From Euprymna scolopes (lineage: Eukaryota): 64,000 nucleotides of DNA. The notes under the pieces are model-generated. The model had not been told where the DNA came from and ran no database searches. It saw only the letters and a program-made list of their open reading frames with translations. The stretch is from the NCBI GenBank assembly GCA_053919585.1, contig CM132790.1; one strand, 5' to 3'. A program made the translations under genes and the position numbers. Below, piece by piece: positions 1,630 to 52,778 of the stretch; the stretch's first letter is position 1; every line of letters begins with the position of its first letter.

Positions 1630-2123
1630 TAAATAAATAAAGATACAGATAATTCACGTTCCTGTATTTGACACCGTGTTTAAAAGTGTCTTTTGCGTAC
1701 ATGGTCATTCATTTTTGCCCAGGAAATCGCACTTTATTTTTACTACAAAACAAAGAAAGCACGGAATTTCAATTTACTCACCTCTTTCTAACCATCTACC
1801 TAACTAGTCAGATAGGAATCAAAGGTACATAAGCTTGAACCTGAATAGGCCTCTCTGAAACAGTTATATCTACCTACACTCTTTGTAGATTTCTCTGAAT
1901 TAGCTTTAAGTATAATATACTGTACTTCTCTTCATGGCGTGTAATATCTTACAATGGCACGAAAGTAAATGACGAATGAAGTACGGAGTTGGAATCATTC
2001 ACAAGTGATGGTTCTTGGTAAAGATGAAAAATTACAGGCACGTGGATGTGAAAATATTTACTATTCAATATATTATACATGTAAATAATTTATAAATTGT
2101 TTTTATTGTTTGCCATTGCGTTA

Positions 2124-3406
2124 CGAGGGGAGTGAATAAGTAATGCACCTGACCCACTTCCAGTTGTCTGATCTAGGTGAAACTTTGCATGACCAATGAT
2201 TTATATCTCTACGGTTTATATGACAAATTACAGCTCTGAACTAATTGTGGTTTCTGTTTTACAGGTGTTTGAACTGAGTCAGTTGTGAAATGGAGCCTGT
2301 TGAATGTCGAGCAGTGATCCGGTTTTTCTATTTGAAAGGACGCACACCACAGGAGATTTTTGATGAAATGAAAGAAACCTATGGTGATAATGCCCCATCA
2401 TATGACCTTGTAAAACGCTGGCATCCTGAATTATAACATGCCCGGAAGTCTGTGGAAACAGCCCCCAGACATTGTCGCCCCCCTTCTGCCATTGATGAGG
2501 CATCTGTCCGTCAAGTTAAGGCTGCCATTTTGGAGGATCGGCGCATTACTATTCGCCAAATAGCTCAAGATGTCAAGAGGGTCTGTGGAAACTATCATTC
2601 ATGACCATTTGCATATGCATAAGGTGTCTGCCAGATGGATTCCCAGGTTGCTCACACCATTCCAGAAGCGAGAACGCGTCGAGTGCTCGAGGATGAATTT
2701 GGAGATGTGCCAAGAAGATGAGCCAAAGTTTTTCAAAAGACTGATTGCACAGGATGAAATCTGGCTCCATCACGATGATTCAGAGACCAAAGCCCAGTCA
2801 ATGCAGTTGAAGCACTTGGATTCACTACCCCCAAACAAGGCAAGGGTGCAGCCCTGCGCTGACAAGGTCATGCTCACAGTCTTCTGCGACCAGGACGGAG
2901 TAGTGATGACAGATTTCCTGGCAAAGGATACTACAATTACAGGTACCTATTATGCTTCACTTTTGAGGAAATTAAGGGAAGCTATCAAAATCAAGAGGCG
3001 GGGCAAGATCAGCAAAGGTACCCTCCTCCTGCAGGACAACGCTCTGGTCCACAACTCGTATGTCGCCAAATCAGAAGCACGGGAGTGTGGTTATGAAATC
3101 CTCCCCATCCTCCCTACTATCCTGACATTGCACCCTCTGACTTTCACCTCTTTCCAACCATGAAGTTGTTTTTGAAAGGAAAGCGTTTCCCAGATGATGC
3201 AGCCTTGAGTTCTTAAGTCACGTCCTGGTTGGAGGATCAACATGGGGTGCTCTACAAAATCGGTCTCCATAGCTGCATCAAACGATGGGAGAAATGCATA
3301 ACTCTGGGTGCTTCCTATGTAGAGAATGACTAATAACTGTGCCAAGTTTCGTTGCTCTACTGCTATGGGAAGTGGGTCAGGGGCATTACTTATTGCACGC
3401 CCCTCG
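2124..3406 (+). mobile_element. Mariner (DD34D, irritans-like) transposon, near full length, defective
   Basis: ~37-bp TIRs (cgaggggagtgaataagtaatgcacctgacccacttcc and its near reverse complement at 3368-3406), TA on both sides, ~1.28 kb. Confidence 0.95.
2290..3333 (+). pseudogene. Mariner transposase pseudogene
   Basis: MEPVECRAVIRF.. HTH start; ARWIPRLLT, QDEIW, LLQDNA and HPPYYPDIAPSDFHLF motifs; in-frame stop and frameshifts. Confidence 0.93.
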
Positions 3407-5883: not shown

Positions 5884-5984
5884 TATCCTTATATTACTCT
5901 TTCAATTATGAGGATGAGTCTATTTGTTTTCTTCGGTTGCTTGGAGACTTATGTAGAAAGTATCAGTCAAGAATCCGTTCTTGG

Positions 5985-6258
5985 TTATCAGCCTGATAGG
6001 CGAGGGGCCAGGAACTGCCCCGGTACCTATCGGACTGAGGTACACCGCCTAGGAGGTTTATTCTCCAATGCCTTATACGGTATACGGGTGGGGCAAGTTT
6101 GTCGCTTGTTGTTTAAGGCGCCTTTACCGGGGAATGCTGATGGGGAAGCCCAGGCAATTTTTGCTAGTTCAGAGTGCCTCTCTTTTAGAAGCACTGGCAG
6201 GAATCCCCACTTTCTGACCTTGTGTCAGATCTTGCTGAGGTAGGCAGCAAGTAAATAT
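5985..6258 (+). ncRNA. Unidentified structured element, copy 1 (multiple hairpins, Sm-like AATTTTTG)
   Basis: 6095-6258 is ~66% identical without gaps to 16335-16498, with compensatory stem changes; extra hairpins upstream. Confidence 0.5.
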
Positions 6259-7290
6259 CTACCACATAATTTTAGATGTTTATATACGTAACTAAAAGTA
6301 AGCAAAACAGAGAAATCGTAATAGGGTCGTTCGAATGTGGAAACGGCGGGTATGATTAATTAGTCAACATAGATTATTTAATATTTATAAACATTTCTTG
6401 GCAAAAAGGTCAATCATTATAATGGTGTAACTGCTGAATTTTTGAGTGGGTTTTAAAAGCCGTTTCTAATCAACTATATATGATAAATATCAGTTATATA
6501 TCGCATACATGTCTATAATGACTATGTATCATCAAATAAGCCCGTTCCTTTTTTTTTTGTACTGTTCAAATTCTTACTATACGTTTCTCTTGTCTTCAAA
6601 TCACTTAGTTCCTCGTCTTTCGACCGGCAAATATCCTATTTCTCGCAATATTTAGCAATCTAATAAAAGCCGGCATTCCTTCTCACTTTTCTCACTCACG
6701 CCGCTGACATCTTTTTAGACTACAATACATTCATTCACGAAGGGTTCCATTCAATTTCCACCATTATGACCTTTTCTGGTAAGCCAACACGTCAGTAACA
6801 TTGAGAAATTCAACGATGTCGCTCAAAGGGAAGAGCCGTAATGGCCAACCACTTTGAAAAGCATACATCAAATAGTGGCTTATATTGGTAGGAACCTGAA
6901 TAGATATTCACGAATTAGAAATACAGCAAGATAACAAAAAACTGATATATTTCAAACTTGAAAACAATTCGTTAGGTGGCCTTATAACAGAATGTGCAGA
7001 TATGAATATCGAATGTTCTAGGCGCAAACATAAAACATTTTGACCTTTAGTGAAACCAAATCTTGGACGTTCATGATGAGGTATTTCGAGTATGCTCTCA
7101 TTCTATATACCATTCTTCTTTACATTGTAATATATAATGTATAGATGTAACATGTATATANNNNNNNNNNNNNNNNNNNNNNNNNNNNNNNNNNNNNNNN
7201 NNNNNNNNNNNNNNNNNNNNNNNNNNNNNNNNNNNNNNNNNNNNNNNNNNNNNNNNNNNNNNNNNNNNNNNNNNNNNNNNNNNNNNNNNN

Positions 7291-7546
7291 GACAGACTAT
7301 GGACACCCACGGTAAGGGTGCCTGCGCGTGAAATTTTTGTGGCACGAGTTGCGCAATCTCGAACCACACCTCTCCTGAGTCAACATTGTTGAATACCAGT
7401 GGCAAACGGAGGTTCAGGGCGACTAGAAACAATGCCGAGATAAGCGGAAAGCACATACAGCGCCTAGAATTCCCAAATGGTCACCCATCTGGTATTAGCC
7501 AGGCTCAACGTTGCTTAACTTCGGTGATCTGACGGGAACCGGTGTG
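7291..7546 (-). mobile_element. 5S rRNA-derived SINE (SINE3-type), family A
   Basis: Reverse complement of 7455-7546 is caccggttcccgtcagatcaccgaagttaagcaacg..gatgggtgacc..tgggaat (5S-like); body shared with 30845-31050. Confidence 0.85.
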
Positions 7547-7962
7547 NNNNNNNNNNNNNNNNNNNNNNNNNNNNNNNNNNNNNNNNNNNNNNNNNNNNNN
7601 NNNNNNNNNNNNNNNNNNNNNNNNNNNNNNNNNNNNNNNNNNNNNNNNNNNNNNNNNNNNNNNNNNNNNNNNNNNNNNNNNNNNNNNNNNNNNNNNNNNN
7701 NNNNNNNNNNNNNNNNNNNNNNNNNNNNNNNNNNNNNNNNNNNNNNNNNNNNNNNNNNNNNNNNNNNNNNNNNNNNNNNNNNNNNNNNNNNNNNNNNNNN
7801 NNNNNNNNNNNNNNNNNNNNNNNNNNNNNNNNNNNNNNNNNNNNNNNNNNNNNNNNNNNNNNNNNNNNNNNNNNNNNNNNNNNNNNNNNNNNNNNNNNNN
7901 NNNNNNNNNNNNNNNNNNNNNNNNNNNNNNNNNNNNNNNNNNNNNNNACACACCGGTTCCCG

Positions 7963-8009
<47 letters not shown>

Positions 8010-8014
<5 letters not shown>

Positions 8015-8770
8015 CAGGTGGACCTTACATTGCTCGAGATAAAATGATGCTGAACGAAAGTTTCACACTCCCATATTTTTATTGTCATCAAAATTAGTGA
8101 AATCGTCCATATTTCAATCAAATCAATTGTGTGCTCCATTTGGGAACCCATTGCGGTGTGACTTAGTTCACAATACATTGTAGATTACATTGCACTATGA
8201 GAACCAACTGAAGATTTTATAAAATTATTTTATATATAATGACTTTAAACAGGTAAAAGTCAAGTAACATGTTTCAATTTTGCTATCAGAAAAACATTAA
8301 TTTTGAAAGCATCCTTGCCATACCAAATACCTTACAGCTGATTTCATATGTTTGGCCTTACTCATTTTGCGGTGATAATGGCGTGAATTTAAGTTAAAAA
8401 GGAAGGAGTCAAGTATTATGTGCCAATCGTGCTTTAATCATAAACTTTCATTTCGAACGTGTCCCTTTCGTATAAAGGGACCTACTGTTTATTTTATATG
8501 TTAGGCTTTTCGGTCTGTGTTGTAACAAAACTTCTCAAATACACATATTAAAGGTGTAAACCTTGGTCAAAATCGCCTGTTCCCTTTTTCATTGAGTAAT
8601 TTCTATTATGGATTCTTATCAAGACATTTCGATACAAAACTTATCAAAGAACACTGCCAGGCACATAACGTACCTTTTCATAAAATTTTATGAAAATCGG
8701 CCAACTGTTTACGTCCATAATATACGGAAAATCAAAATGATACAATGACTTACCGTAACAATTTCTGTTA
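8010..8770 (-). mobile_element. Non-autonomous Helitron-like dispersed repeat
   Basis: Homologous to 46016-46770, which begins ACTAG; shorter matches at 12890-12990 and 51040-51125. Confidence 0.65.
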
Positions 8771-9340
8771 TATTTTTGTAACGATTTTGAGTTTAAAAAA
8801 TAATCAAGAAATTTGTATTTTCTGCAACCAATTGTTTTAATCAAACAGAATTGAACAAAATTAATAAGAAAACCACATTTTCTTTTGTTTTTCGTATTCT
8901 TTTAACAAGTTTTGTTTTATGTGTTTTTTTTTCACGTATAATATGTATTTTTTAATGTTTTTTTTAAATTTGTAACTAAGGTAAACATTTTCTTTTTTTT
9001 ATTCCATGAATTTTATTTCCTGTGAGGCTGGGCAACCGATTTCAAAACATAAATTCAATTAAGTTTAATAAGGTTTAAGATGAAGACAAAAAGATCATTA
9101 CTAAATTTCTGTCTCCACATAAACTTAAAAAAAAAACTTTTAATAAGCTCTTGACGTTTTCAACTAACTTGATATAAGGTGAAGATATTCATCCAGTATA
9201 AAGTTGCTAGGAAGTTGAGTTGTTTACTTCATTTTATGATATGTTTTCTTCCAATATTTTCCCCAAGGATCGTCTGCTCTTTTGTCGCATATAGTCAAAC
9301 TCGAGCGCATGACCACGCGAGTGGATAGTAATTTACGTCT

Positions 9341-9411
<71 letters not shown>

Positions 9412-9413
<2 letters not shown>

Positions 9414-9792
9414 GGCAGGATCATGTTGATACACCGGTTCTCTTTAGTCGGAGAAGTTAAGCAATTATGAGTCTGGTCAGTACAAGATGAGTGACTATTT
9501 GATATTGCCAGGCGCTGTATGTACTGCTCTGGAACGTAGAAATTCCCAACTGTATATCCGAGGGCGCGTTCAATCCACAGGGAGGCATGCACCCTCAGTC
9601 TTCTTTAAGACATGCATCTATTGGAAAGAATTGTCTAATGTAAAATCTGAGACCTACAGTCTGCTCTCTCCTGTGAAAACCATCCCACCGACTGTGGGCG
9701 TGTTCTACACAAAGCCTTTCCCACTAAAACATGTTACTGTGTGGTTTTCCGAATAAGTTAATTGTTGTGGCGAACCTCATACATCGGAATCG

Positions 9793-9795
<3 letters not shown>
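9412..9795 (+). mobile_element. 5S rRNA-derived SINE, family B
   Basis: tacggc..acaccggttctc..gaagttaagcaa..gatgagtgac..aggcgctgta head followed by an unrelated body; flanked by (TA)n. Confidence 0.75.
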
Positions 9796-9858
<63 letters not shown>

Positions 9859-9875
9859 TTTATAAAATATATATG

Positions 9876-9939
9876 GCGATTAAGCTACACTGAATGTTCC
9901 GCGTTTCATCCACTCTAGGACTCCTCAGGCTTATGCGCG
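9876..9939 (-). ncRNA. Type I hammerhead ribozyme
   Basis: taagc-CTGAGGA-gtcc(tagagt)ggat-GAAA-cgcggaacattcagt-GTA-gctta. Confidence 0.8.
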
Positions 9940-10052
9940 AATTCTGTGGGCGTTTATCGTTTTTATATAAAATTATATATATATATATAATATATATAAA
10001 ATATATAAAATTATATAAAAAATATAAAAAACGATAAACAACCACCGAATTC

Positions 10053-10115
10053 GCGCATAAGCCTGAGGAGTCCTAGAGTGGATGAAACGCGGAATATTCA
10101 GTGTATCTTAATCGC
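10053..10115 (+). ncRNA. Type I hammerhead ribozyme (stem I mismatch)
   Basis: Same core; the 3' strand reads GTA-tctta. Confidence 0.7.
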
Positions 10116-10242
10116 CATATATATTTTATAACTTACTAACTAGCTCTACCTACGTATTGAATACTTCTGAAGCAAATACTTAAAGTTTACGTATAAATCT
10201 ATACTTTCGTATATTAATTTTACGTAAGTAATTAATTAGGTA

Positions 10243-10296
<54 letters not shown>

Positions 10297-10297
<1 letters not shown>

Positions 10298-10348
10298 TAG
10301 CAGTATAGCCTGGCTTTGCACGGTCCCTATATACTGTTCATAACTTTA

Positions 10349-10410
<62 letters not shown>

Positions 10411-10970
10411 TGTGACTTATGTTCAGGTAACCTACATCTAAAATTTTAAGTGTCTTGACCGAAAATTTAGCAGAGGATTTCGGCAGAGTCTGAAAATGTC
10501 AACTCTTTCTGCTTTGACCTCTTGGCAGCCACATTTCCGCCCAAAAACTAATTAAAAAGCTTGCTGCATATCTGAATACCTTTTATGTAAAATGCCAAAT
10601 GTTTAGATCTAAAATTTGCCGAGAGGTCAATATTTTTTGTAAATTTGACTCCAATATGACCCCTTAACATTTATTGTTTGGGCTACAATTAAAGTAAAAT
10701 ATTTGATCGATGTCCCTGAAACCTACTTCTAAAAGTTCAGGGGTTTAGACGCAAAATTGGCGGAGGAGTATAGTAGAGTTTTCAAAGATCAAATCGTTGA
10801 ACTTTGTCCCCTTAAAAGCCAAATTACTGGCCGAAAATCTATTAAAATATTTTCTCAAACCTCAATACCCCTGATGTCAAATCTCGAGTCTGTAGGCTGA
10901 AAATTGACCGAGAAGTTTAGTAGGGAAATTTACAAACACAGACGGACACACAGAAAATTTCACTTATATA
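10297..10970 (-). mobile_element. Non-autonomous Helitron-like element
   Basis: Starts A|CTAG plus a GC-rich palindrome-like motif; homologous to 53265-54000; tttgacc subrepeats. Confidence 0.7.
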
Positions 10971-10975
10971 TATGT

Positions 10976-11038
10976 CGATTAAGCTACACTGAATATTCCG
11001 CGTTTCATCCACTCTAGGACTCTTCAGGCTTATGCGCG
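10976..11038 (-). ncRNA. Type I hammerhead ribozyme, sense to and downstream of the PLE ORF
   Basis: taagc-CTGAAGA-gtcc/ggat-GAAA-cgcggaatattcagt-GTA-gctta; core intact. Confidence 0.82.
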
Positions 11039-11427
11039 AATTTTGTGGTTGTCTGTCGTTTTTATATATACACACCTTCTATTGAGATTTAAGTTAGGCA
11101 ATAAGCTTTCTAGTATCCACCGCGCCCTTCCTATCAGCCAATGAACATGCACTTATCGGACCGAGTCCTATTTGAGCTCTGGTTGACCTGTTCCTTTGTG
11201 TGTGCTCTATTAAGCCTGAATATCTAGTTTCTTGACCTGTTTTAAATCTAAGTTATGTTAGTTTATATATAATTATATATATATGTACCTACATATATGC
11301 ACATATATATGTACATATATATATACATACATATATGTGTGATCGTTTATGTATATTCATGTTTACTTAATTTATTTATTTGTTTATTTTCTATTGTTTT
11401 TGTTAGTTTTAAAACTAGTTTGTATCG

Positions 11428-11905
11428 CTATCCTAGAGTAAATTTTATCTTGTGAACACAGTTGTTCGCTATTTCTCTTCTACAGTTTAATAGATGTTGG
11501 GATTCTTTAAAGTACAGGATAACAAATTTTTCATGAAGGCATAATCTACATGGGTCGTCTAGGTCCCTACACGTGGTAGCTTGTCTTATTATTTTCCATT
11601 CGACTACCGGCAAATGTCCGCTTTCCTTGAGTTCCCAGTATTTATTGGCTAGCGTTTTTTTCATTCGGTGTTTTTTATTGTTGAATGTACTTTTGTGGTC
11701 ATAATATCGAGTTTTGAAATCTAAGGATGTGATACCTGCGTAATATTTCTTGTTATTCGGGTTTTCTTTCGCAAATGTTGTGGCCTGGAAAACTACGCTT
11801 TTTGTTAGACATTTATTTTGAAGTGGGCAAAGTGTGCGGTGTCCACAGTTGCATTTATGTTGTTCGTTATTAGTATTTTTATTTCTAGTATGGTTGTTCT
11901 TGTTC
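11428..11905 (-). CDS. Penelope-like GIY-YIG endonuclease domain (C-terminal part of the PLE ORF; RT missing)
   Basis: CNC..CPLQNKC..VVF..YAGIT..FKTR..H..F..YWELK..W.I..CRLC..EK..LN.R.E..CVH; uninterrupted to the stop. The Met in the ORF track comes from the inverted repeat. Confidence 0.88.
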
Positions 11906-12283
11906 GGGGTTGGTTTATTATTATCATCATTATTATTATTATACATATGAACATGAATATGCATAAACGATCACACATATATGTATATATATATATATGC
12001 ATATATATGTGCATATATGTATGAACATATATATATATTTATATATAAACTAACATAAAAAAACATAACTTAGATTTATAACAGGTCAAGAAACTAGATA
12101 TCCAGGATTAATAGAGCACACACAAAGGAACAGGTCAACCAGAGCTCAAATATGCCTATGTCCGATAAGTGCATATTCATTGGCTGATAGGAAGGGCACG
12201 GTGGATACTAGAAAGCTTATTGGCTAACTAAAATCTCAATAGAAGGTGCTTTTATATAAAAACGACAGACAACCACAAAATTC

Positions 12284-12346
12284 GCGCATAAGCCTGAAGA
12301 GTCCTAGAGTGGATGAATCGCGGAATATTCAGTGTAGCTTAATCGC
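12284..12346 (+). ncRNA. Type I hammerhead ribozyme with core mutation (GAAA to GAAT)
   Basis: ctgaaga-gtcc/ggat-gaat-cgcggaatattcagt-gta-gctta. Confidence 0.65.
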
Positions 12347-13784
12347 CATATATATTTTATAACTTACTAACTAGCTCTATCTACGTATTGAGCATTTTTG
12401 AAGTAAATACTTATAGTTTACGCATAAATTTATACTTTCGTATATTAATTTTATATGAGTAAATGAAGTAGTTATATATATATATATATATATTTATTCA
12501 GTTCGATAATTTCTTCATTATTATTTCTAACATTTCCTTCACTTTATAGAGGCTTGTTTTTTCAGCTTTATTTTTATGCATTTAATGTTTATTCTCGAGT
12601 TTTAATTTTTTTGTAGCATAATGATTTTACCCCAATTAATATTTTGCCATTGAATTTATCGTTTTTGCAGGAACTTTTCACTTGATATTGTGTAATTACA
12701 TTTATCATCTGACTCCTTATAGGAGCTATTGATGTAGCGTTTTGAATTTTTTCAGTATACTCCTTGTTTTATACCTTATATATCGTTGGGTGTATATGAC
12801 AAGTCTATTTAATCATTATAACACGCCTATTTAATGTGTTCATGTAGATATATGACATGTATTTACGTAAAGTGTTTGTGATCGTCTGGTTTGTTGGTCA
12901 AAATCGCCTGCTCCCTTTTTCATTGACTAATTTCTATTATCCATTCTTATCAAGACGTTTCGATACAAAACATATGTCAGACACATAAAGGTGGAGCTCG
13001 CAAGTGAATGGTATCCTCCTACCAAATATTTGAAAATATTTGAAAATTGATCGAATAGTTTTGCAATAAAATACAATCAAAATAATTATTTTTAACATTT
13101 GGGATGCTAAAACGTATATGCTACAATTAAGAGCATTTCTGGACGATATTTGTAAAAAAAAATCTGTGTACATTGTCTAAAATTAAAAATAAAACGTTTA
13201 TATTAGATAAAATAATAAAGACTTCTATTTATATTGCAACGATTAAAAATAAAAAAAGTTATATATTTTTAAATTACTAAAAGTTTTATTTATATTGTTT
13301 AAAATTAAAAAAATATGGTGTATATATTATTTACAATAAATAAGATCTGTTCACTATTTTAAATGATTTTCATAGTGCTTCTTTTAAAAGAATTTCTGAA
13401 TGTTTAAAACTATTAACTTCTAAAATATCGATATTATTGTTTACAGATCGATTGCATGGTTACATGGATTAGGGATATTTGGCTCCTTTTTTCTGATATA
13501 AGAATCTAGAGTATTTTACGACTCAATTTCCAATCTTGCCCTATTTGTTTTTATCTGTAATGCAAAGCAATTTAAAAATATTTATAAAAACTTTAGATGT
13601 TATTATGCCTTGAGAGAATATTTCCATTTTATTAACACGGTTTCAATAGTTTCAGATGATTTGAGTAATTCTTTTTTTTTGTTCTACGGCATATCAACCC
13701 TTTTCAGGTTATTTAATGCTGAATCCAATGATTTTGAAGAATCATTTTTTAATAGAGTATGTTTTTTTTGTTGTTTTTTGTGTT

Positions 13785-13942
13785 GGCTTCTATTTAACCC
13801 ATAGTTGGGACCCTTACAGGTACTACCACTCCGGGTAGAGTGGACCTGGGAGCAATGGCAATTAAAGAGTGGCTCCACACTCCCTAAAGCCAGCAAGCTG
13901 GGACCTCACAATCGAATATAGTTTAAGGTAATATCTAGGACC
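13785..13942 (-). mobile_element. Short retroposon related to an RTE-type 5' region
   Basis: Reverse complement gtcctagatat..taaact..gaggtcccag..gggagtgtggag..ccaggtccactct..gtagtacc is homologous to 32485-32640. Confidence 0.6.
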
Positions 13943-14336
13943 GTTGTATAAAGGGTTCTTTTTAGAATTTTTATAAAGACCAATTTCATAGGATATGAGA
14001 GTATGGTGATTTAAATATATTTTGTTTTTGAGTAATTCTGTTGTCTTTAAACTCCCAATTACAAAATCTATAAAAGGCCGTAATCATAAACTAGTAATGA
14101 AAAGTACAAATAAAATTCGTAATATTCCAATGTAAAAGAAAAACAAATGCAATTTACAGATTTGTTTTATTTGAATATTTTAAACGTGAAAACATTTTTT
14201 CCTTACACATACGCATGGTAAAATGGAAACGGAAACACGGTTTTACCGACCAAGCTAGACACCATGTAAAAATGTTATTACAGCATCTAGATATATTTTT
14301 TTTTATTTAGATATTCTATTTTAAATTATTTTTATT

Positions 14337-14450
14337 TACAATTGGTGTTTCCAAAGTAACGCCCCCTCATTTTATTCTGCCGATGCAGATAAGAGTGAAT
14401 TGCAAATTGTATTGCTATGATGAAAGAGCCTTTCTTTTAAGCTTCGTATA
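14337..14450 (+). mobile_element. Mariner-type terminal fragment
   Basis: Homologous to 3715-3830. Confidence 0.45.
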
Positions 14451-14527
14451 ATACGTGAGCTTTTTCGTGACTTCGTTTTGAATTAAATATTGTACATTTA
14501 ATTCGATAATATCTTGACCTTTTCTAC

Positions 14528-14561
<34 letters not shown>

Positions 14562-14562
<1 letters not shown>

Positions 14563-15268
14563 TAGCTGATTTATGAAAGTATGATAGGTTATCAAAAGGA
14601 AGGGTTGTAAATTTGGGTTGAATTTGGGGGTATCAAAACCAAAGCAAAATATGATAAAAGTAAAAATCAAATAGATAAACCCGATAATTTATAATGCCAT
14701 ACCTGTTTACACTGAAACACTTATCACAATATTTTGTGGATCTATATTAAAACACCTTGTTAAACTTTGTGACATATTTCCATTCCATGGAAGTCAAGTG
14801 CGAACGAACACCCTATAATTTTATTATACCATATTTCTTCAAACTGAAACATAATTATCAAATTATACTTAGGCAGATAGATATGAAAAGTCTTTATTAA
14901 CGTTTGTGCCTATTTCCATTCTATGGAGGTCAGGCGCGAACGCAGACCCCACAATTTTATTATACCATCCTTATTTAAGTTAAAACGTACCCATCAAAGT
15001 ATTCTTATGTACACCTATATCAAAAAGACCTGTAAACGTTTTTTTTTAATTAATTTTTTTTTTTATTTCAATACTTTGTGGACCAGGCGCGAAAGCAGAC
15101 CCCACAATTTTAATGAAGCACCGTTCTGCCAGATCAAACATACCCATTCCTGTGTCTCGATACATCTTCTATCATTATATGTAATCAGTTCTTTTAGATA
15201 GTCAACCATATAGGAGCCTATTCGTGACCAGACACACCCACACACGCATACACACACAGACATTCAGC

Positions 15269-15275
<7 letters not shown>
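14562..15275 (-). mobile_element. Non-autonomous Helitron-like element (~700 bp)
   Basis: A|CTAG terminus; close inverted copy at 37735-38425; three internal ggaggtcaggcgcgaa..cccacaattttat subrepeats. Confidence 0.8.
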
Positions 15276-15317
<42 letters not shown>

Positions 15318-15319
<2 letters not shown>

Positions 15320-15843
15320 GAGCAAACAGTTAATGAAATATGTTAAAAACACTTTGAAATGAGTTAAAAACATATTTAATCTGAAAAGGAAACACTAGAT
15401 AAATGGATAGTCCTTAATCCGCGGAGTTTCGAAGAAATACTCTCCTTCTCATCAGAGGGTAGGAATTAGCAAAATGCGGGATCGGATTTTACATGCAGAA
15501 GTATTTGATGAAACAACAAATAAGTCAAAGATCTTACTTGAAAACAAAATAAGTTAAGCAGAGGGAATATGTTAAAGAAAGAGGTGATTACACATTAATG
15601 GATAGTCTGGTGGAAGATAAAAAATCCAGTGACGGTGAAATCCAAATGTAAAACTTCAAGAAAGTTAAAAGAATTTCCATTTGTACAAGTAAAATCCAAG
15701 GAAATCCCGTAATTGGAAGAAGATGGTCCATAATAATCCAAAGGCAGAAATCCATGGAATAATTCACAAAAAAATGTGTACAAGGAAAAAATAATATTAA
15801 TAAAAGAAAAATAAGATGTGCTTTTCACTCTACTACCGAGACA

Positions 15844-15847
<4 letters not shown>
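15318..15847 (-). mobile_element. PLE-derived non-autonomous element with a hammerhead-like motif at 15411-15464
   Basis: Reverse complement cct-CTGATGA-gaag..cttc-GAAA-ctccgcgga-tta-agg; both ends match the internally deleted copy at 30418-30500. Confidence 0.6.
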
Positions 15848-15921
<74 letters not shown>

Positions 15922-16334
15922 GTTACCTAGTCGATGTTTGTGCGAAACGTCTCCACAAAAATCGTTCCTGGACATTCGGTCTATTGAGTTAAAGCTTTAT
16001 ACATAAGGTTTTTGACCTGTAGCACACTGCTACTAATGGGTGAAAATTGCAAACAAATTAGTTGACCTTCACAGCATTAGTCGACTAACATCTTTACATG
16101 AACAAACCTACATTCATATGCTAAACAACGTTATATTTTAACTATTACTATGCATATGCGCGTGACAAAGTTGCTTAAAAATTAGGCCGGAAAGTATATT
16201 TCAGTTTCGTGTATAGGTGATATTTGTTTTGTTTTTTTATATCACTACTATATCTTATATATTAATAATCGATAGAGAATTGACTCAAGAATAATAAATA
16301 CATAATTTGCCTGAATTAAAATATACAATTGCTT

Positions 16335-16498
16335 AAGTTTATAGCTTGCTGCCTAAGATGCCGCAACCAGGGAATGCCGACGGTGATGCTCAGGCAATTT
16401 TTGCTCGGCAAGAGCGCCCTTTCCTTAAGGCGCTTGCTTGACCCCTCACACTCCTGATCTTGTGTCACATAATACTGAGGTGGTCAGTATTTAAATAT
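16335..16498 (+). ncRNA. Unidentified structured element, copy 2
   Basis: Homolog of 6095-6258; stems tgcct/aggca, agcgcc/ggcgct, tgat/gtca and aatactga/tcagtatt. Confidence 0.5.
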
Positions 16499-16900
16499 TT
16501 ATCCATTTTGAATTTGGAGACAAAGACGAGTGTCAAAGGTAAGGTAGACATTTTTTGATAGCATGAATAGGTTAGCCAATTTAATCTGGAGCAAGAAACA
16601 AGGTAAAATATTCGAAATATGTTTTGTTCTTGTGATTACAAGAGGTGGTGCTTGATCAACACTGCTGGGAACCAATATTTAATATACTGTTTTGATTTTA
16701 AATCCTCGAAATAGTTTTTCATGGTAGACAACTGATAATTCCTGAAATAATTTTAAGACTATTGTGAGTTCGAGAAAGCAAGTTGATACAACGATTACAG
16801 ATGATTACATGACTGACTAAGTAGTTTTCCACGAAATAATAAAATATATAAAGTTAAATAAGTTTTTTTTAATATAGTTTTAAAGGTTAAAAACTTACAA

Positions 16901-16961
<61 letters not shown>

Positions 16962-30844: not shown

Positions 30845-31050
30845 ATACTTCTCCTGACTCGACACTGTTTGAGTTTAGTGGCAAGAAGCAGTGCTATACG
30901 ATAGGAAACATTGCCGAGATAAACGGAGAACACATACACCACCTGGAATTTCCAAATGGTCACCGATTTTAGTAGTGACCAAGCTCAACCTTGCTTACCT
31001 ACGGTAATCTAATGGGAACCCGTGGGTCAACGCAAATGATGCCGTATACA
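30845..31050 (-). mobile_element. 5S rRNA-derived SINE, family A copy
   Basis: Degenerate 5S head plus body (ctcctga.tc.aca.tgtt..agtggcaa..gaaaca.tgccgagataa.cgga) shared with 7370-7546. Confidence 0.8.
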
Positions 31051-44189: not shown

Positions 44190-44330
44190 CCGATTTCCAT
44201 GATCTGATGTGTAGAACAAATTTTCTGACTATCAAGTGAATGGTTGTTAGTTCGATCCACGCTTAGGATAGACGCTGGTCTATTTACACTAAGGACCTGT
44301 GATACAGCGACACAAGTTGTCTATGGATGA

Positions 44331-44332
<2 letters not shown>
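44190..44332 (+). mobile_element. tRNA-headed SINE-like element with a degenerate hammerhead
   Basis: Box B agttcgatcc at 44249; ctaagga-cctg(tgata)cagc-gaca-caagttg-tc; homologous to 52640-52778. Confidence 0.55.
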
Positions 44333-44386
<54 letters not shown>

Positions 44387-44774
44387 TTCAATATCGCAAT
44401 TTAAAAAATAACACTTAATTTTAATACCCATGATTAAAGAGAGAAAATAAACATCAGCTGATATATTTCGCCCTCACTTATCAAGAATTTTAGCGAGGGA
44501 TTTCTATTACCGAAGGAGAAAACGAGGAGCACTTTCTATATTTCAATAAATTGGCGTTTTTGTAATAGAAGAATATCTTAGAGGGTAATCGTGTAGAGGA
44601 AAATTTTTATATTTACAAAGAGAAGTTCTTTTTAACGAACCTATACAGTTTCCAATATTTTTGGATATTGTTTGAGTGAGCATTCACAAAAAAATGAAAA
44701 TGAGTCAGAGTTGCAATTCGTTGTGCGTTTTTTTTAAGTAAATGAAGGCCTGAGTGTATTTTTTACATAGGAGT

Positions 44775-44983
44775 CACCAAGTATCAAGGCCATGAGGTCA
44801 CTTCAGGATAAGTGTTATTGTGTGTACAGTAATAAATGGCAGAATTTCGTAGTAGTCGTTATTAATGGAAATTTGGTAGATTGGATTACTTAAGGGGGCG
44901 GTTCATCAAGAATTTGTTTATGTTGGACTTGAAGAAAACCAAGTTGTAGTCAGTTGGGAAGCAGGCAAACGAAAGAGAGTTTA
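44775..44983 (-). mobile_element. CR1-group LINE 3' tip
   Basis: Reverse complement matches cttcaagtccaacataaacaaattc..gaaccgcccccttaagt. Confidence 0.85.
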
Positions 44984-46015
44984 CTTAGAACGTTCGTTGG
45001 TTGTTACATCCCATTCTGAGTATGCTAGTTATTTGTTATATTGTAGTTTCAATCTCAACCAGGTTCAAACCACGTAGTCGGTCCTCCAACTACATTTAAA
45101 TTTATAAATTAAATTATTATGTTATGCGAATAGCACGTACGTTCGAGAGAAGGCCATTACCTGTACCGTAGAAAACCAAACACGTGCATCGAAAGTAGCA
45201 TTGTTCAAACGTTGAGTTGATTTGCTCCGCGAATTTCTCACTTATTGTCCCTTACCAAAGCAAACGAATGTAAATTGGACATTTGGTCATCGTATTTAAT
45301 TTAGTTTTTGAAAAAGTCGTTTTACTACTTTGGACCAACCCAATTACATCAAGAAGGTTATTTGATAAAGTAGTATTTAGTTTCTCCTCCAATTTTGCTT
45401 TTGAGCAATTAAGGGCACAGTGTGCTTGGGCCCAGACTTAATTATGCTTTCCTTTGTTAAAACAAAATGCATCCCAGTTTATATATACAGTCCCGTAAAT
45501 GTAGGTTAACGTTAGATTAATGTAAGGCAACTGGATTTACTTTTTCTAATCAAAACATAAAGGAAAGCTACAGTCGCATTACGCTTTTCTTCATAAGTAT
45601 ATAATTTGATGCGGGATGCTAGTTATTAATAAGAATTTTTTTCTGCTTAAGACATTGTTTTTAATTGGAAAGACAATGTGTGTTGTCTACGTATGGAATG
45701 TAGACTAAAGGTTTTAGGAGCCCAAATAATAATTGTTTCACATGGAAAAAATGTTCGCCATTATTAGTCCTGCGATTGAACCTATGCATACCCTATCTAT
45801 TTGTATATTCATCGATAAAATAAAATTCAGAAAGAGTGAGGAATAACTGGTTACGGTATACAAAATCAGCACATATAGCTAATAGCTATTGTTTCTAATC
45901 TAGGGACACAAGTAAATACGTTACTAATATCAGAGAAGCACATAAATTTATTAACAACTTGACATTTTCTAAACAATTAGTAAAATAAAATGAATTTTTA
46001 ATTCAGTATTTACTA

Positions 46016-46770
46016 CTAGCAGGAAGACTTGATGTTGTTCGGGATTCAATGATGATCAACGAATGTTTTACACTCCTATAGTTTATTGTCACTGAAATCG
46101 GTTAAATCTCCCATTTTTCAATCAAATCGATTAATTGCCTACTCTAGTTGGGAAATCATCGCGGTGCAACGGAAGAACAATTTAGATACCTGCAGTGACT
46201 TAGCGTACAATACATAGATAACCTACTCTTATTTTTCTAAAATTGTTTTGATATATAATGGCTTAAAATAAAGTTTAAATGCAAAAGTCAAATATCATGG
46301 TTCAATTGTGCTCAAAACAAAAACGCGCTTTTCAAACGTGCCCCTAGCATATTAAAGAACATAATATTGATTGTATATGACGGGTCTTACTGCTTGTACG
46401 GTGACAATGGCTTGAATTTAAGTTTAAATTGAAAATGTCAATTATAGTGCAATTGTTCTTTAAACAGAAATATGCATTTCGAACAGACCCTTGTCATGTT
46501 AAAGAACTTACTGTTAATTTTTATGTCGGGCCTTTCAGCTGGTGTGGTGATAAAACTTCTCAAATGCATATGTGATGTTAAACTGTACCAGGTGTTAACT
46601 TTGGTCAAGATCGACTGTTTCTTCTTTAATCGGATTATATCGATTATCGAATACCGATACTTATCAAAGGCATTCCGATAGAAAACGTATTCAAGTACAC
46701 TGTCAGGCACATAAAGTGCCTTCATGTGCAATGTTATCATCGCCACATCCGTTTTTCTTCATACGGAACT
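46016..46770 (-). mobile_element. Non-autonomous Helitron-like element
   Basis: A|CTAG terminus; homologous to 8010-8770. Confidence 0.65.
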
Positions 46771-48245
46771 CTCTCTCTCTCATTCTCTCTCTCTCTTTAT
46801 CTATCTATCTATCTATCTATCTATATATCTCACACACACATACACAGACACACACGGGAAAGGTCCTTTTTATATAGTAGTAGATAAGGCTCTAATAGAG
46901 GCTGTAAGATATTGAAGATCAATTTTGCAACTTATGTTGTTATGACCCCACCATAGAAACAATGAAACCTTTTGAGTTTTGAGTAAGCCATATAACATTG
47001 GACAGATACAGCCTGGGAGTCTAGTCTTATTTCCTATAGCTGAACTAAGCACACCACTTTTAACCCACTTTAACCAATATTTTTAGGAATTTAGTATCTA
47101 AGGGAGCTGTTGCATCATGAACGTCGACAGGGTCAAATTTAACACATTTTCCTGTCATTCAAAAAGGCTAACTTTTTGTCGGCATAATTCCTTACGAGTT
47201 ATACAAATAACTTTTAAACCTTTATCTATGGTTATTACTAAAGACTTATTTTGTCGTAGAGAGTTTATGGCAACGATGTGTTATTTACGCAATTTAAACT
47301 CAGAATCCGATAATGTGGTACTCGAAAATCTGTGAGCAAGATAATTTAATCTTGTTTTCAGGTCCCCAACTTTCGTCTAAAAATAAATGAGAACTAAGAA
47401 TGTCAGATTCTGAAAGAAAAAATATTTACCTTTACAACATTCCAATCCATAATCAAGCACTCGAAGTTTGGAAGGGGACAACTTATGAGAGAAGAGATGT
47501 AGGACGTTTCGTTTACATTTGTGTTTGTTGAACATCCACATATTTTTGCATATTAAAATTTGCAATTTAGCATAAAATTGAAGAACTAGCCTTTTAAGAG
47601 AACGCTTCCGTTAATAATAACACACCGTGCAAAACGAATTTTATTCTACCAGATAGAGTAACTCTAAAATTCAAGGTATTTATTTTTTAGACTTTTCGAA
47701 ATTTAATGCTGATTCCCCGATATAAAGTACAGATAAAGGCATTATAAATTTTATATTCTGGGTGTAACTTCGATTTCAAGCGGTTTCGCCTTCACTCATC
47801 AAGAACCGTGTCGGGAGGGGGGTTAATTAAAGGGAGAACAACGAGGGAAACGTTCTGATATATATATATATAATGGTGGATGTATTATAGCTAATCACGT
47901 ACTAACTGAAGAGACCCACCTGCTTCACAAAAAAAAGAGTCTCATTTTATGAACCTGAAGAGTATCCAATGTCATCATATGAAGTTTGGAATAAGGATGA
48001 CATGGAAATTATTCAATGCTAAAATTTGTTAGGATTGATGATCTCTAAGTAAAAGGTCCTTTATAAAATACACTGATATATAACAGAGAACCTTCCCTGG
48101 TTCGCAGGTCGTATTCCTGATTATACTAGATCGTTATGAGATTGTTGCGTTCTACTATCCAATCTCATCGTAATCCTCCCTACGTAGTATGTACTGCAAC
48201 TGCATTAAAAATAAGTCTCACTATTAATTGTGTGGATTTTAGATC

Positions 48246-48287
<42 letters not shown>

Positions 48288-49034
48288 TACGACAAATTAT
48301 CCTTGATATAGAACAGTATAAGATAACCGTAACTTTTTTAAATAGCCAACTGAAAGAAACTACTACTCCGATTTATATAAAATCTCCGATATATGAATGA
48401 AAGAATTATCTATTTTTTTAATTTTGACAAAACTAGTATACTTATATAAGTTATTTTACGTAGTTCGTTTGTAGCGCATTTATAACCTAATTTCCTTCCC
48501 ATATAAAATAATAAGATTTCCCATAATCGGAATAATGTACTAGAATTAATTTTTATTTCATTAGAAATACAATTGAATAGAAGAATATATATAGAAATAA
48601 AATATAATATTTGATAAACAATATAATATCGATAGAATAGAGTTTTAAATTATATTTATATTTAAAGGTAATTGAACACCACTGTTTACGTTTTTATGAA
48701 TGTGATATCGAACAGTAATTCATGTGTAATATCTTTTATTGCAAAATTAATCATTATTAAATTAATAAAAATCAGTGTTTAAAGGAAGGATTTTTTACTT
48801 CGAAAATCGATAAAAAATATATCGAGATTTCATTGCATAATACTTATTGAAACATATATAAAATACTTGATTTAGTCCAAATTGTTAGCATTGGTATGGG
48901 ATCTCAGACTGTAACATCTGCTACTTTTTAATTTTGATTATTGAGTGTTTTTTTGCATAATATCATGCATATTTTTCCCTATTCAAGCTACTATTATAAT
49001 GATTGATAATGAGATCGTATTATCATTATTATTG

Positions 49035-50061
49035 ACTCAAATGGAGCTTTCACACCAGTCAACAACCGATCAGTTTGAGGACCTGTGGTGTTCTCTGGAA
49101 GCTGAGTGACAACACGTCTCCCCAGATGTCCAGCTCCCTCCAATTCCTTCGATAGCACTTGCAGATAAATCTGCGTCATCGCAACAGCCTCACATCATTG
49201 ATTTCTCGCTGGTAGTGGCCATTGGTTTGTACTGGAATTTGAGTGGCACTAAGCCTCCCCACGATCCCAGTTCTCTTCGCGCTTGTCCAGCGGAGATCTG
49301 TCCAGCGCTCTCTCCTTGGTCTTTCCATCCTCCTTGACCCTTCTCGGCTCTTTGGTATCACTTTTCTATTGGGGGGGACGGTGATGAGACAATGGGGAGG
49401 GAGGTGCATGATGGTGGCGTAGAACTTGTTGATATGCAGCTTCGGCGATCTCCATTCCCTGTAATGCTTCTTTGTTATATTGTCTTGTGTTATTCCCCGC
49501 ATTCTTGGGTTTTCCTTAATATTTCAGCCGTTTTCTTTATCGTTAGGTGTTGTATTTTTGCAGTTATTCCTCTGATTCCAGTTCCTGCCATTTTTTTTCG
49601 AAGTTTTTTGGAATTGTTCCTAGTGCTCCTACTATTACCGGTACTATTTTGATTTTCTTCATCATCCAACTCCCTTTTAACTCTCTGGCTAGTTCTGTGT
49701 ATTTGCTTCGTTTCTCCTTTTCTTTCATACACACCCTGTGGTCAGCTGGGACAGCAAAGTCTACGATTTGACAGGATTTTTCTTTCTTGTTAATTATTAC
49801 GACATCTGGTCTTCTTTCCTGGATGGGGTTTGTCCGTCTGTATGTCCATGTCCCATAGGATTTTGTGGTTCTCGTTTTCGAGTGCTGTTGCGGGTTTATG
49901 CTTGTACCATTTGTCTGCACGCTCAAAATGCAGTCGTTTGCATAATTCCCAGTGCACTGCCCTCCCCACTTGGTCATGCCTGTTTTTGTATTCCTTTTGG
50001 GTCAGTTCGCTGCATTCACTTACAATATGGTTTATCGTTTCGTCTCTCTGTTCACATAGTC
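49035..50061 (-). mobile_element. R4/Dong-clade LINE 3' fragment
   Basis: ERRPDVVIINKKEKSCQIVDFAVPAD..EKEKRSKYTELAREL..VPVIVGALG (PD..D restriction-like endonuclease); TAT-rich tracts at both ends. Confidence 0.92.
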
Positions 50062-50122
<61 letters not shown>

Positions 50123-52639: not shown

Positions 52640-52773
52640 CTGATCCATGAACCAAAGGGAAGAACTGCTTACTATCAACGTGATGGTTATAGGTTCGATC
52701 CCCGTCTGGGTAAAGGGGCTAGTCTAGCCGTATCGATGAGTTGTGATACAACGAAACAGTGACGTATGTTGAT

Positions 52774-52778
<5 letters not shown>
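52640..52778 (+). mobile_element. tRNA-headed SINE-like element with a hammerhead-like motif
   Basis: Box B ggttcgatcc at 52692; tcgatga-gttg(tgata)caac-GAAA-cagtgac-GTA. Confidence 0.6.

What the first reader, a model, noticed from the sequence alone, without database searches (positions are those of the whole stretch)
6095..16498. Unidentified structured RNA-like module in two copies, with compensatory stems around an invariant Sm-site-like motif
Seen: 6095-6258 and 16335-16498 align at 108/164 identities without gaps (hand count), yet four stems are kept. The last hairpin is cttgctg/cagcaag versus aatactg/cagtatt, which is three compensatory pairs. Another is agtgc/gcact versus agcgc/gcgct (one compensatory pair). 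The others are tctgac/gtcaga versus tgat/gtca and tgttt..gg/cc..aggca versus tgcct..ga/tc..aggca. Non-canonical pairs are mostly G-T on the + strand, which points to + as the folded strand. The longest invariant stretch, caggcAATTTTTGct (AATTTTTG at 6156-6163 and 16396-16403), lies between hairpins. Known: an unpaired RAU4-6G between stems is the Sm-binding site of spliceosomal snRNAs, SL RNAs and SmY RNAs. I could not match the sequence from memory to U1, U2, U4, U5, U11, U12, U4atac, 7SL or 7SK. Inference: this is an undescribed Sm-class small RNA or a structured cis element under selection for its fold.
Basis: partly seen in the sequence, partly recalled or inferred. Interest (0 to 1): 0.8.

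Follow-up and report, generated by a model that had tools for sequence, protein, structure and literature searches.

The report
Structured retroposon module, not an snRNA
The two look-alike 164-base stretches are decayed copies of the 3' half of a highly folded mobile element. It is present in thousands of copies in this large mollusc-type genome, so they are not genes for a new spliceosomal-type small RNA.

Summary
Window 6095-6258 and 16335-16498 match at 108 of 164 positions without gaps, AATTTTTG sits where stated, and the stem differences are compensatory.

The module is not a two-copy RNA gene. It is the 3' half of a roughly 370-nt unit ("Y") of a dispersed repeat:
- The 5.9-Gb genome gave about 1,800-3,000 first-look candidates.
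- An 18-mer of the module has 174 exact hits against 0 for its control.

Copy A (window 5899-6263) is a solo unit. Copy B (16334-16961) is a 5'-truncated copy of a variant with another 3' extension.

The evidence for RNA-mediated spread is variable flank duplications, 5' truncations and dispersal over many contigs.

The unit consensus is very structured (z -6.5). On 101 copies, three base pairs switch between subfamilies with both sides changed. Individual copies decay alike at paired and unpaired sites, and the two window copies fold no better than shuffles.

So the fold was selected in the source elements, probably as the 3' recognition structure for a reverse transcriptase. It is not selected at these loci.

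There is no Rfam match, no tRNA head and no hammerhead. AATTTTTG is the best-kept 8-mer, so an Sm-type role for the element RNA is unproven but not excluded. Other notes of this scan describe different stacking retroposons in this genome.

The parts
5899..6263 (+). Copy A: a solo unit-length ('Y') copy of the repeat. It has no carrier leader and no carrier tail. Its true 5' end is probably about 15 nt further upstream, near 5884.
   Evidence: BLAST of the family consensus covers consensus positions 322-700 at 79.5% identity. The sequence was read.
5899..6094 (+). Head of unit Y in copy A. In the consensus it is a series of near-perfect hairpins.
   Evidence: Consensus built from 60 loci extended upstream; consensus fold.
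6095..6258 (+). The 164-nt module in copy A, which is the 3' half of unit Y.
6156..6163 (+). AATTTTTG in copy A. It is unpaired in the consensus fold and is the best-conserved 8-mer of the module.
6231..6251 (+). 3'-terminal hairpin of copy A (cttgctg / cagcaag, subfamily A type).
   Evidence: Helix 7 is 92% paired across 101 copies, and two of its pairs covary.
16334..16961 (+). Copy B: a 5'-truncated copy of a variant ('C-type'). It consists of the module, an extension of about 465 nt (the last ~60 nt is a (TA)n run), and lacks the head.
   Evidence: It aligns over about 630 nt with L040, L058, L044 and L043. The sequence upstream of 16335 is unrelated.
16335..16498 (+). The 164-nt module in copy B.
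16396..16403 (+). AATTTTTG in copy B.
16471..16491 (+). 3'-terminal hairpin of copy B (aatactg / cagtatt).

Best explanation
The 164-nt module is the 3' domain of a roughly 370-nt, highly structured unit ('Y') of an abundant non-autonomous retroposon family. The host is a 5.9-Gb mollusc-type genome, probably a decapodiform cephalopod (inference).

Shown:
- Y occurs as solo copies flanked by target-site duplications of variable length.
- It also occurs as 5'-truncated copies and as head-to-tail stacks of 2-3 units.
- It also occurs inside a carrier element ('X') of about 330 nt. X has a 45-bp minisatellite, two inverted CCAAT boxes, a TATAAATA box and its own A-rich tail.
- Solo Y copies delimited by flank duplications begin 20-33 nt downstream of where the TATA box lies in X-Y composites.

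Inferred:
- Y RNA is transcribed from X-Y source elements, probably by RNA polymerase II. A run of five T inside the module would stop polymerase III.
- A reverse transcriptase supplied in trans by a LINE or a Penelope-like element copies it from its 3' end.
- The module's helices, above all the terminal hairpin followed by GTAAATATCTAC, are the structure that enzyme or RNA stability requires. That would explain why substitutions fixed between subfamilies are compensatory.

Once inserted, copies decay neutrally. The two window copies are such relics of different subfamilies, so their stems look compensated around blocks that never varied in the source lineages, such as AATTTTTG and CTTGTGTCAC.
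For: Copy number and dispersal:
- 2,956 and 1,817 first-look candidates; full-length 164-nt hits at 78-84% identity on many contigs.
- 174 exact hits of an 18-mer, against 0 for its control.

The element is longer than the module:
- Conserved head upstream.
- Leader and 5' region.

Retroposition:
- Flank duplications of 9 nt or more in 13% of 76 single copies, against 1.1% in mismatched pairs. Examples: L084 13 bp, L054 12, L078 11, L005 and L015 10.
- 5'-end histogram with a peak at consensus 310-349 plus scattered truncations; 3' ends are tight.
- Six copies, including copy B, begin at about consensus 520-539, the first base of the module. This is just 3' of a 7-bp G+C-rich hairpin and is consistent with stalling of the reverse transcriptase.

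Carrier element:
- The leader and the X tail go together: 24 of 28 with the leader, against 6 of 40 without.
- TATA lies at consensus 283, and ATTGG boxes at 226 and 257.
- Forms that skip the unit exist in RNA contigs (joints).

Structure:
- Consensus unit folds at -179 kcal/mol, against -139 +/- 6 for shuffles, z -6.5.
- A well-kept copy gives z -3.2.
- Covariation score is 0.217 against 0.164 for shuffles (0 of 500 reach it).
- Three pairs switch type with both sides changed: 87-131 AU 41 / CG 40; 178-200 CG 54 / AU 31; 179-199 UA 51 / AU 46.
- Between the two main subfamily consensuses, all 6 differences that fall in shared helices keep the pair.

Neutral decay of copies:
- Paired and unpaired non-CpG sites keep 0.849 and 0.847 identity; CpG sites are lower.
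- The window copies give z -0.66 and -0.94.
Against:
- The internal start site rests on motifs and on clustering of 5' ends. Poly(A) RNA-seq shows no rise in depth downstream of the TATA box and no clustered read starts.
- Shuffle controls for covariation are inflated by shared ancestry. The strong signal comes from a few subfamily splits, and at least two subfamily differences at helix ends are not compensated (pairs 82-135 and 93-127).
- Solo copies end at CTAC(CC), although the carrier tail lies downstream in X-Y sources. This needs an extra assumption: internal 3'-end formation, or priming at the hairpin.
- I could not search Repbase or Dfam, so the family may already have a name.
Confidence: 0.8

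Rival explanations
1. The element RNA is an snRNA-like parasite. It would be a capped polymerase II transcript whose unpaired AAUUUUUG between stems binds the Sm ring, which would give stability and nuclear re-import. The Sm-like motif would then be functional in the source elements, though not in the two window copies.
For: - AATTTTTG is the most often intact 8-mer: 72% of 72 copies that were not selected on it, rank 1 of 163.
- It does not vary between subfamilies.
- It is unpaired in the consensus fold, between a long-range stem and a 15-bp hairpin.
- A run of five T argues against polymerase III, and a TATA box with CCAAT boxes lies upstream.
Against: - No Rfam snRNA model matches at E<=10.
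- The base after the G is C, not the usual purine (my own knowledge of Sm sites).
- A second block without Sm character, CTTGTGTCA, is kept almost as well at 69%.
- A and T sites decay least in this family anyway.
- The motif can also pair as GCAA-UUU-UUGC.
- There are no RNA data of the right kind.
Confidence: 0.07
2. A retrozyme-like, Penelope-dependent element. Unit-length RNAs would be made from tandem units and perhaps circularised. The 5' TGATGAG...GAAA stretch would be a degenerate hammerhead.
For: - Head-to-tail stacks occur in 14 of 96 arrays.
- Solo copies are slightly longer than one unit, with like sequence at both ends.
- The fold is extreme.
- The same genome carries tRNA-plus-hammerhead elements (L046 253-372). 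According to other first-reader notes, it also carries CCAAT/TATA cassettes directly upstream of hammerheads (not checked by me).
Against: - No hammerhead or other ribozyme model matches the unit at E<=10, or 20 loci at E<=1.
- Read by eye, the core deviates at C3 and lacks the G10.1-C11.1 closure.
- Adjacent units are no more alike than random pairs (76.9% against 74.9%), and some belong to different subfamilies. This fits separate insertions better than multimer copying.
Confidence: 0.08
3. A repeat that spreads at the DNA level: a satellite-like short array carried by a Helitron, Helentron or MITE, as is known in bivalves. The hairpins would be DNA signals.
For: - Variable unit number (0-3) between fixed left and right flanks.
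- A hairpin about 12 nt before the CTAC end.
- The reverse complement folds almost as well: -177 against -179 kcal/mol.
Against: - Flank duplications are of variable length, 5-13 bp.
- 5' truncations are many and 3' truncations few.
- No terminal inverted repeats were seen at the ends read.
- G-U pairs are conserved on one strand only.
Confidence: 0.04

Closest known systems
Stringent-type SINE/LINE pairs in which a conserved 3' stem-loop is recognised by the partner's reverse transcriptase (eel UnaSINE1/UnaL2; named from my own knowledge of Kajikawa and Okada's work, cited in PMC5786205)
   Same: - A non-coding retroposon whose 3' domain carries a hairpin kept by compensatory change.
- 5' truncations and flank duplications.
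- Subfamilies.
   Different: - No tRNA, 5S or 7SL head and no A or B boxes.
- A run of five T inside the body.
- No partner LINE identified.
- The unit rides inside a second element that carries a TATA box and CCAAT boxes.
Ceph-SINEs of squids and cuttlefish (Akasaki 2010, as described in PMC5786205 and PMC4824008)
   Same: The probable host group, and the modular build of head, conserved body and tail.
   Different: - The 23-nt RTE-like signature quoted in PMC5786205 is absent; the best match has 10-11 mismatches.
- No tRNA-like head.
- I had no Ceph-SINE consensus to align.
U2-headed self-stacking retroposons noted elsewhere in this genome by this scan (s1-275095, s1-259178 and others), and SINEU of crocodilians
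   Same: - Same genome.
- Short non-coding retroposons that pile up head to tail at a fixed junction.
- An snRNA-like look.
   Different: No U2 or other snRNA match on this unit. The junction sequence here (ATACCC | TCATTATAT) is not U2-like.
Metazoan retrozymes and Penelope-like elements with hammerheads
   Same: Tandem units of 170-400 nt, a very stable fold, and a promoter-bearing repeat upstream.
   Different: No ribozyme detected.
Sm-class snRNAs (U1, U2, U4, U5, U7, SL RNA)
   Same: An unpaired A-U5-G between stems, and probably polymerase II transcription.
   Different: - Thousands of decayed copies with flank duplications.
- No family match.
- The motif lies mid-molecule in a unit of about 370 nt, with three further hairpins downstream.

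Membership tests
Sm-class snRNA gene | Match to a known snRNA family, by sequence plus structure | tested here: not met
   There is no Rfam hit on either window copy at E<=10. There is none on a well-kept unit at E<=10, and none on 20 other loci at E<=1.
Sm-class snRNA gene | Single-stranded RAU4-6GR site flanked by stems | tested here: inconclusive
   AAUUUUUG is unpaired in the consensus fold. However, it is followed by C, and it can also form a GCAA/UUGC mini-hairpin.
Sm-class snRNA gene | Few conserved gene loci that give a discrete, abundant, Sm-bound, trimethylguanosine-capped RNA | tested here: not met
   - Locus number: not met. There are thousands of copies about 10% diverged from their subfamily consensus.
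- Discrete RNA: poly(A) libraries show low two-strand coverage without clustered ends.
- Sm binding and cap type cannot be tested with these tools.
SINE (polymerase III retroposon) | Head derived from tRNA, 5S or 7SL with an internal polymerase III promoter | tested here: not met
   - ARAGORN finds no tRNA in the window or in 28 loci.
- The best A-box and B-box matches have 2 mismatches each and are misplaced.
- A run of five T lies inside the unit.
Non-autonomous non-LTR retroposon (broad sense) | Dispersed copies with variable flank duplications, 5' truncation, and no coding capacity | tested here: met
Non-autonomous non-LTR retroposon (broad sense) | 3' end shared with an autonomous LINE or Penelope-like partner | not tested
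No reverse-transcriptase open reading frame lies next to the five module-only copies examined.
Ceph-SINE | tRNA head plus Ceph domain (CORE-like part and RTE 5'-UTR-like part) | tested here: not met
   The 23-nt RTE-like signature from PMC5786205 is absent, and there is no tRNA head. This is only a partial test, because no full consensus was available.
Retrozyme / hammerhead-bearing repeat | A hammerhead ribozyme in every unit | tested here: not met
   There is no ribozyme match on the unit. The same search does detect a genuine type I hammerhead in a flank (L046 328-372, 38.2 bits).
Solo LTR | TG...CA ends with a flank duplication of fixed length, 4-6 bp | tested here: not met
   Flank duplications range from 5 to 13 bp, and the ends vary by 1-3 nt.

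The most novel reading that the evidence does not exclude
Y RNA may be a polymerase II-made, snRNA-like selfish RNA. In this reading it borrows the Sm assembly pathway through its invariant AAUUUUUG between stems for stability and return to the nucleus, and it is launched from a mobile CCAAT/TATA promoter cassette carried by a second retroposon. That would be a two-element 'launcher plus cargo' system.
Probability: 0.07. Interest if true: 0.7.

Novelty: new member of a known kind. Interest (0 to 1): 0.3.

Why it matters
It removes a false lead. Compensatory stems around an Sm-like motif here reflect subfamily evolution of a mobile element, not a new spliceosomal RNA.

The family has some interest for transposon biology:
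- It has no head derived from a small RNA.
- It is one of the most tightly folded repeat consensuses one meets.
- It rides in a promoter-bearing carrier element.
- It stacks head to tail.
- A cuttlefish genome paper leaves about 40% of total base pairs as uncharacterised repeats and reports almost no SINEs (PMC13218726). That this window comes from such a genome is my inference.

It also offers a natural data set for how selection on RNA structure acts on source elements while their copies decay.

Tried and rejected
- Rfam at gathering and permissive thresholds on the window, on both copies, on 20 loci and on a well-kept unit: nothing on the element.
- tRNA scan: nothing.
- By eye I suspected a 5S-like or U2/U6-like head and a hammerhead at the unit start. 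No model supports any of these, so I dropped them.
- LINE 3'-UTR idea: no reverse-transcriptase-like open reading frame upstream of the five module-only copies.
- RNAalifold on 101 decayed copies predicts almost no consensus structure. Decay breaks the pairs, so I tested a structure taken from the consensus instead.
- Literature: a search for k-mers of the consensus found no paper, and the supplement of PMC5786205 is not held.
The analysis therefore rests on 100 loci, about 140 copies.
- Poly(A) RNA-seq laid at 85% likeness gave low, two-strand, sense-biased coverage. It showed neither a start site downstream of the TATA box nor discrete ends. It is uninformative for a non-adenylated small RNA.
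- Local tandem duplication as the origin of the stacks is not favoured, because neighbouring units are no more alike than random pairs.


Full report
**1. The observation**

The two stretches are as described. Window 6095-6258 and 16335-16498 share 108 of 164 positions without a gap (alignment). AATTTTTG lies at 6156-6163 and 16396-16403, and the four stems can be read in both copies.

The assembly gaps at 7161-7290 and 7547-7947 lie between the copies and touch neither. They do not matter here, because the two copies turn out to be separate insertions.

**2. It is not a two-copy feature**

- Each 164-nt stretch finds full-length matches at 78-84% identity on many contigs of the window's own 5.9-Gb assembly. 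The first look gave 2,956 and 1,817 candidates, of which only 40 are scored per search.
- The 18-mer CCAGGCAATTTTTGCTAG occurs 174 times exactly, against 0 for its reversed control.
- Sequencing runs that hold the locus include 'mollusc metagenome' libraries.
- Genome size and contig layout resemble decapodiform cephalopods (PMC13218726). One flank holds a near match to the Ceph-SINE signature (L022).
- The host identity remains an inference.

**3. Anatomy of the element**

Extending 60 loci shows that conservation continues about 200 nt upstream of the module.

The repeat unit, here called Y, is about 370 nt. It consists of a head that begins GGATGAGTCTCC, the 164-nt module, and an end at CTAC(CC).

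About a third of the copies carry a further conserved leader of about 330 nt. The leader has these parts:
- a 5' end near TTTTGAATTGGAAGCC;
- a 45-bp repeat, present twice in the consensus and about 24 times in L019;
- two ATTGG boxes at consensus 226 and 257;
- TATAAATA at consensus 283.

Such copies also end in TCATTATAT(A)nTATTGCAACA. Leader and tail go together: 24 of 28 arrays with the leader have the tail, against 6 of 40 without it. They therefore form a carrier element, X, that holds Y near its 3' end.

Contigs from RNA runs contain forms that join the leader directly to the tail (joints), so X also exists without Y. A search with the leader alone gives 3,841 candidates at 86-89% identity.

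Fourteen of 96 arrays hold two or three Y units head to tail. Neighbouring units are no more alike than random pairs (76.9% against 74.9 +/- 5.2%). In L013 and L052 the neighbours belong to different subfamilies. This favours repeated insertion at one junction over local duplication.

**4. The two window copies**

- Copy A (5899-6263) matches consensus positions 322-700. It is a solo Y without leader or tail.
- Copy B (16334-16961) starts exactly at the first base of the module. It continues for about 465 nt, ending in a (TA)n run, into a sequence shared with L040, L043, L044 and L058, where a head precedes the module. It is therefore a 5'-truncated copy of a variant family.
- Five of the first 60 loci, copy B among them (L031), start at that same base with unrelated sequence upstream.
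- That point lies directly 3' of a 7-bp G+C-rich hairpin of the head. A reverse transcriptase stalling there is a simple explanation (inference).

**5. Mode of spread**

- Among 76 single copies, the flanks share an exact word of 9 nt or more in 13%, against 1.1% for mismatched flank pairs. For 10 nt or more the figures are 9.2% and 0.7%.
- The lengths vary from 5 to 13 bp. This fits target-primed reverse transcription. It does not fit LTR, TIR or Helitron insertion.
- 5' ends are scattered, with two peaks, while 3' ends are tight.
- The main peak of 5' ends is at consensus 310-349.
- In the five solo copies with clear flank duplications (L005, L015, L078, L084, L094), the element starts at consensus 303-316. 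That is 20-33 nt downstream of the first T of the TATA box in X-Y composites.
- This suggests that solo Y copies are retrocopies of RNA started at that TATA box in X-Y source elements.
- It remains an inference. Poly(A) RNA-seq laid at 85% likeness gives low coverage on both strands, with a 2-10-fold sense excess over the module in one run, no rise after the TATA box and no clustered starts or ends.
- The run of five T inside the module, and another in the leader, argues against polymerase III.

**6. Structure and covariation**

- The Y consensus folds at -179 kcal/mol, against -139 +/- 6 for dinucleotide shuffles (z -6.5). The module alone gives z -3.1.
- A well-kept copy gives z -3.2.
- The two window copies give z -0.66 and -0.94.

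I tested the consensus-derived helices on 101 copies (A2):
- 85.8% of cells pair, against 82.2% after shuffling partners (0 of 500 reach it).
- With partners slid by 1-3 columns, 33-44% pair.
- The covariation score is 0.217 against 0.164 for shuffles (0 of 500 reach it).

Three pairs switch type with both sides changed:

| Pair (alignment columns) | Pair types and counts |
|---|---|
| 87-131 | AU 41 / CG 40 |
| 178-200 | CG 54 / AU 31 |
| 179-199 | UA 51 / AU 46 |

The terminal hairpin exists as CTTGCTG/CAGCAAG, CATGCTG/CAGCATG and AATGCTG/CAGCATT. Two divergent copies have CTTCCTG/..AGGAAG, and L086 has CTTGCTT/AAGCAAG. That amounts to several separate pair-keeping changes.

Between the two main subfamily consensuses, all six differences that fall in shared predicted helices keep the pair.

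Caveats:
- The shuffle control ignores shared ancestry.
- Two subfamily differences at helix ends are not compensated (pairs 82-135 and 93-127).

Within copies, paired and unpaired non-CpG sites are equally conserved (0.849 against 0.847), and CpG sites are lower. Selection therefore acted on the source elements, not on the inserted copies.

**7. The Sm-like motif**

Among 72 copies that were not selected on the motif, AATTTTTG is intact in 72%. That is the highest of all 163 8-mers of the module. TTGTGTCA follows at 69%.

It is unpaired in the consensus fold. These facts keep an Sm-type role for the element RNA possible.

Against it:
- A and T sites decay least in this family.
- The motif is followed by C.
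- It can pair as a small hairpin.
- No snRNA model matches.
- Nothing can be said here about Sm binding.

I put this reading at about 7%.

**8. Comparison with known families**

- The unit is not a tRNA-, 5S- or 7SL-headed SINE.
- It lacks the quoted Ceph-domain signature.
- It has no ribozyme match. The same search finds a true tRNA-plus-hammerhead element in a flank.
- It does not match U2. Other agents of this scan report U2-headed self-stacking retroposons in this genome, and first readers report CCAAT/TATA cassettes in front of hammerheads. I used these as leads only.
- It works most like a 'stringent' retroposon whose 3' stem-loop is read by its partner's reverse transcriptase. The partner was not found.

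**9. Verdict**

The interpretation as a new Sm-class RNA is not supported.

It is a module of a mobile element whose fold was selected in the source copies. This is a new or unclassified member of a known kind, of modest interest.

Noticed in passing
window 30931-31049 (-), window 7462-7556 (-), L059 2323-2439 (-): There are 5S rRNA matches above the gathering score (48.9, 44.3 and 53.4 bits), scattered in unrelated places. The one at 7462-7556 is cut by the assembly gap at 7547. They could be dispersed 5S pseudogenes or a 5S-derived retroposon.
   Followed up: no
L046 253-372 (+): A tRNA-like stretch (21.8 bits, below threshold) is followed directly by a type I hammerhead (38.2 bits, above threshold). 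This is the same kind of element that another first-reader note reports at window 44190-52778.
   Followed up: partly
L019 (- strand), about 1,080 nt upstream of its X-Y copy; consensus positions 41-121 of the carrier: The 45-bp repeat in the 5' region of carrier element X is present twice in the consensus. In this copy it has expanded to about 24 tandem copies.
   Followed up: partly
L036 1159-1220: The stretch of the carrier just 5' of its CCAAT/TATA boxes has far higher RNA read and contig depth than the rest of the element. About 160 reads continue upstream into a different consensus (CCCGGGAAAGAACATGTGAAATTGCTCCAG). This piece is therefore shared with another, more highly expressed repeat or gene.
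   Followed up: no
L022 (- strand) 1283: A near match (4 mismatches in 23) to the RTE-like signature of the Ceph-SINE domain quoted in PMC5786205 lies in a flank. It hints that Ceph-type SINEs are present and that the host is a cephalopod.
   Followed up: no
L030 1496-1665 and 2516-2684 (-): Two near-identical copies of the module, with the same private substitutions, lie about 1 kb apart. This looks like a local segmental duplication that carried the element, unlike the stacked arrays.
   Followed up: no
L018 2541-2636, L041 1279-1349: Long perfect inverted repeats in the flanks score as plant or animal microRNA precursor families, far below their gathering scores. They are probably MITE-like hairpins.
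   Followed up: no
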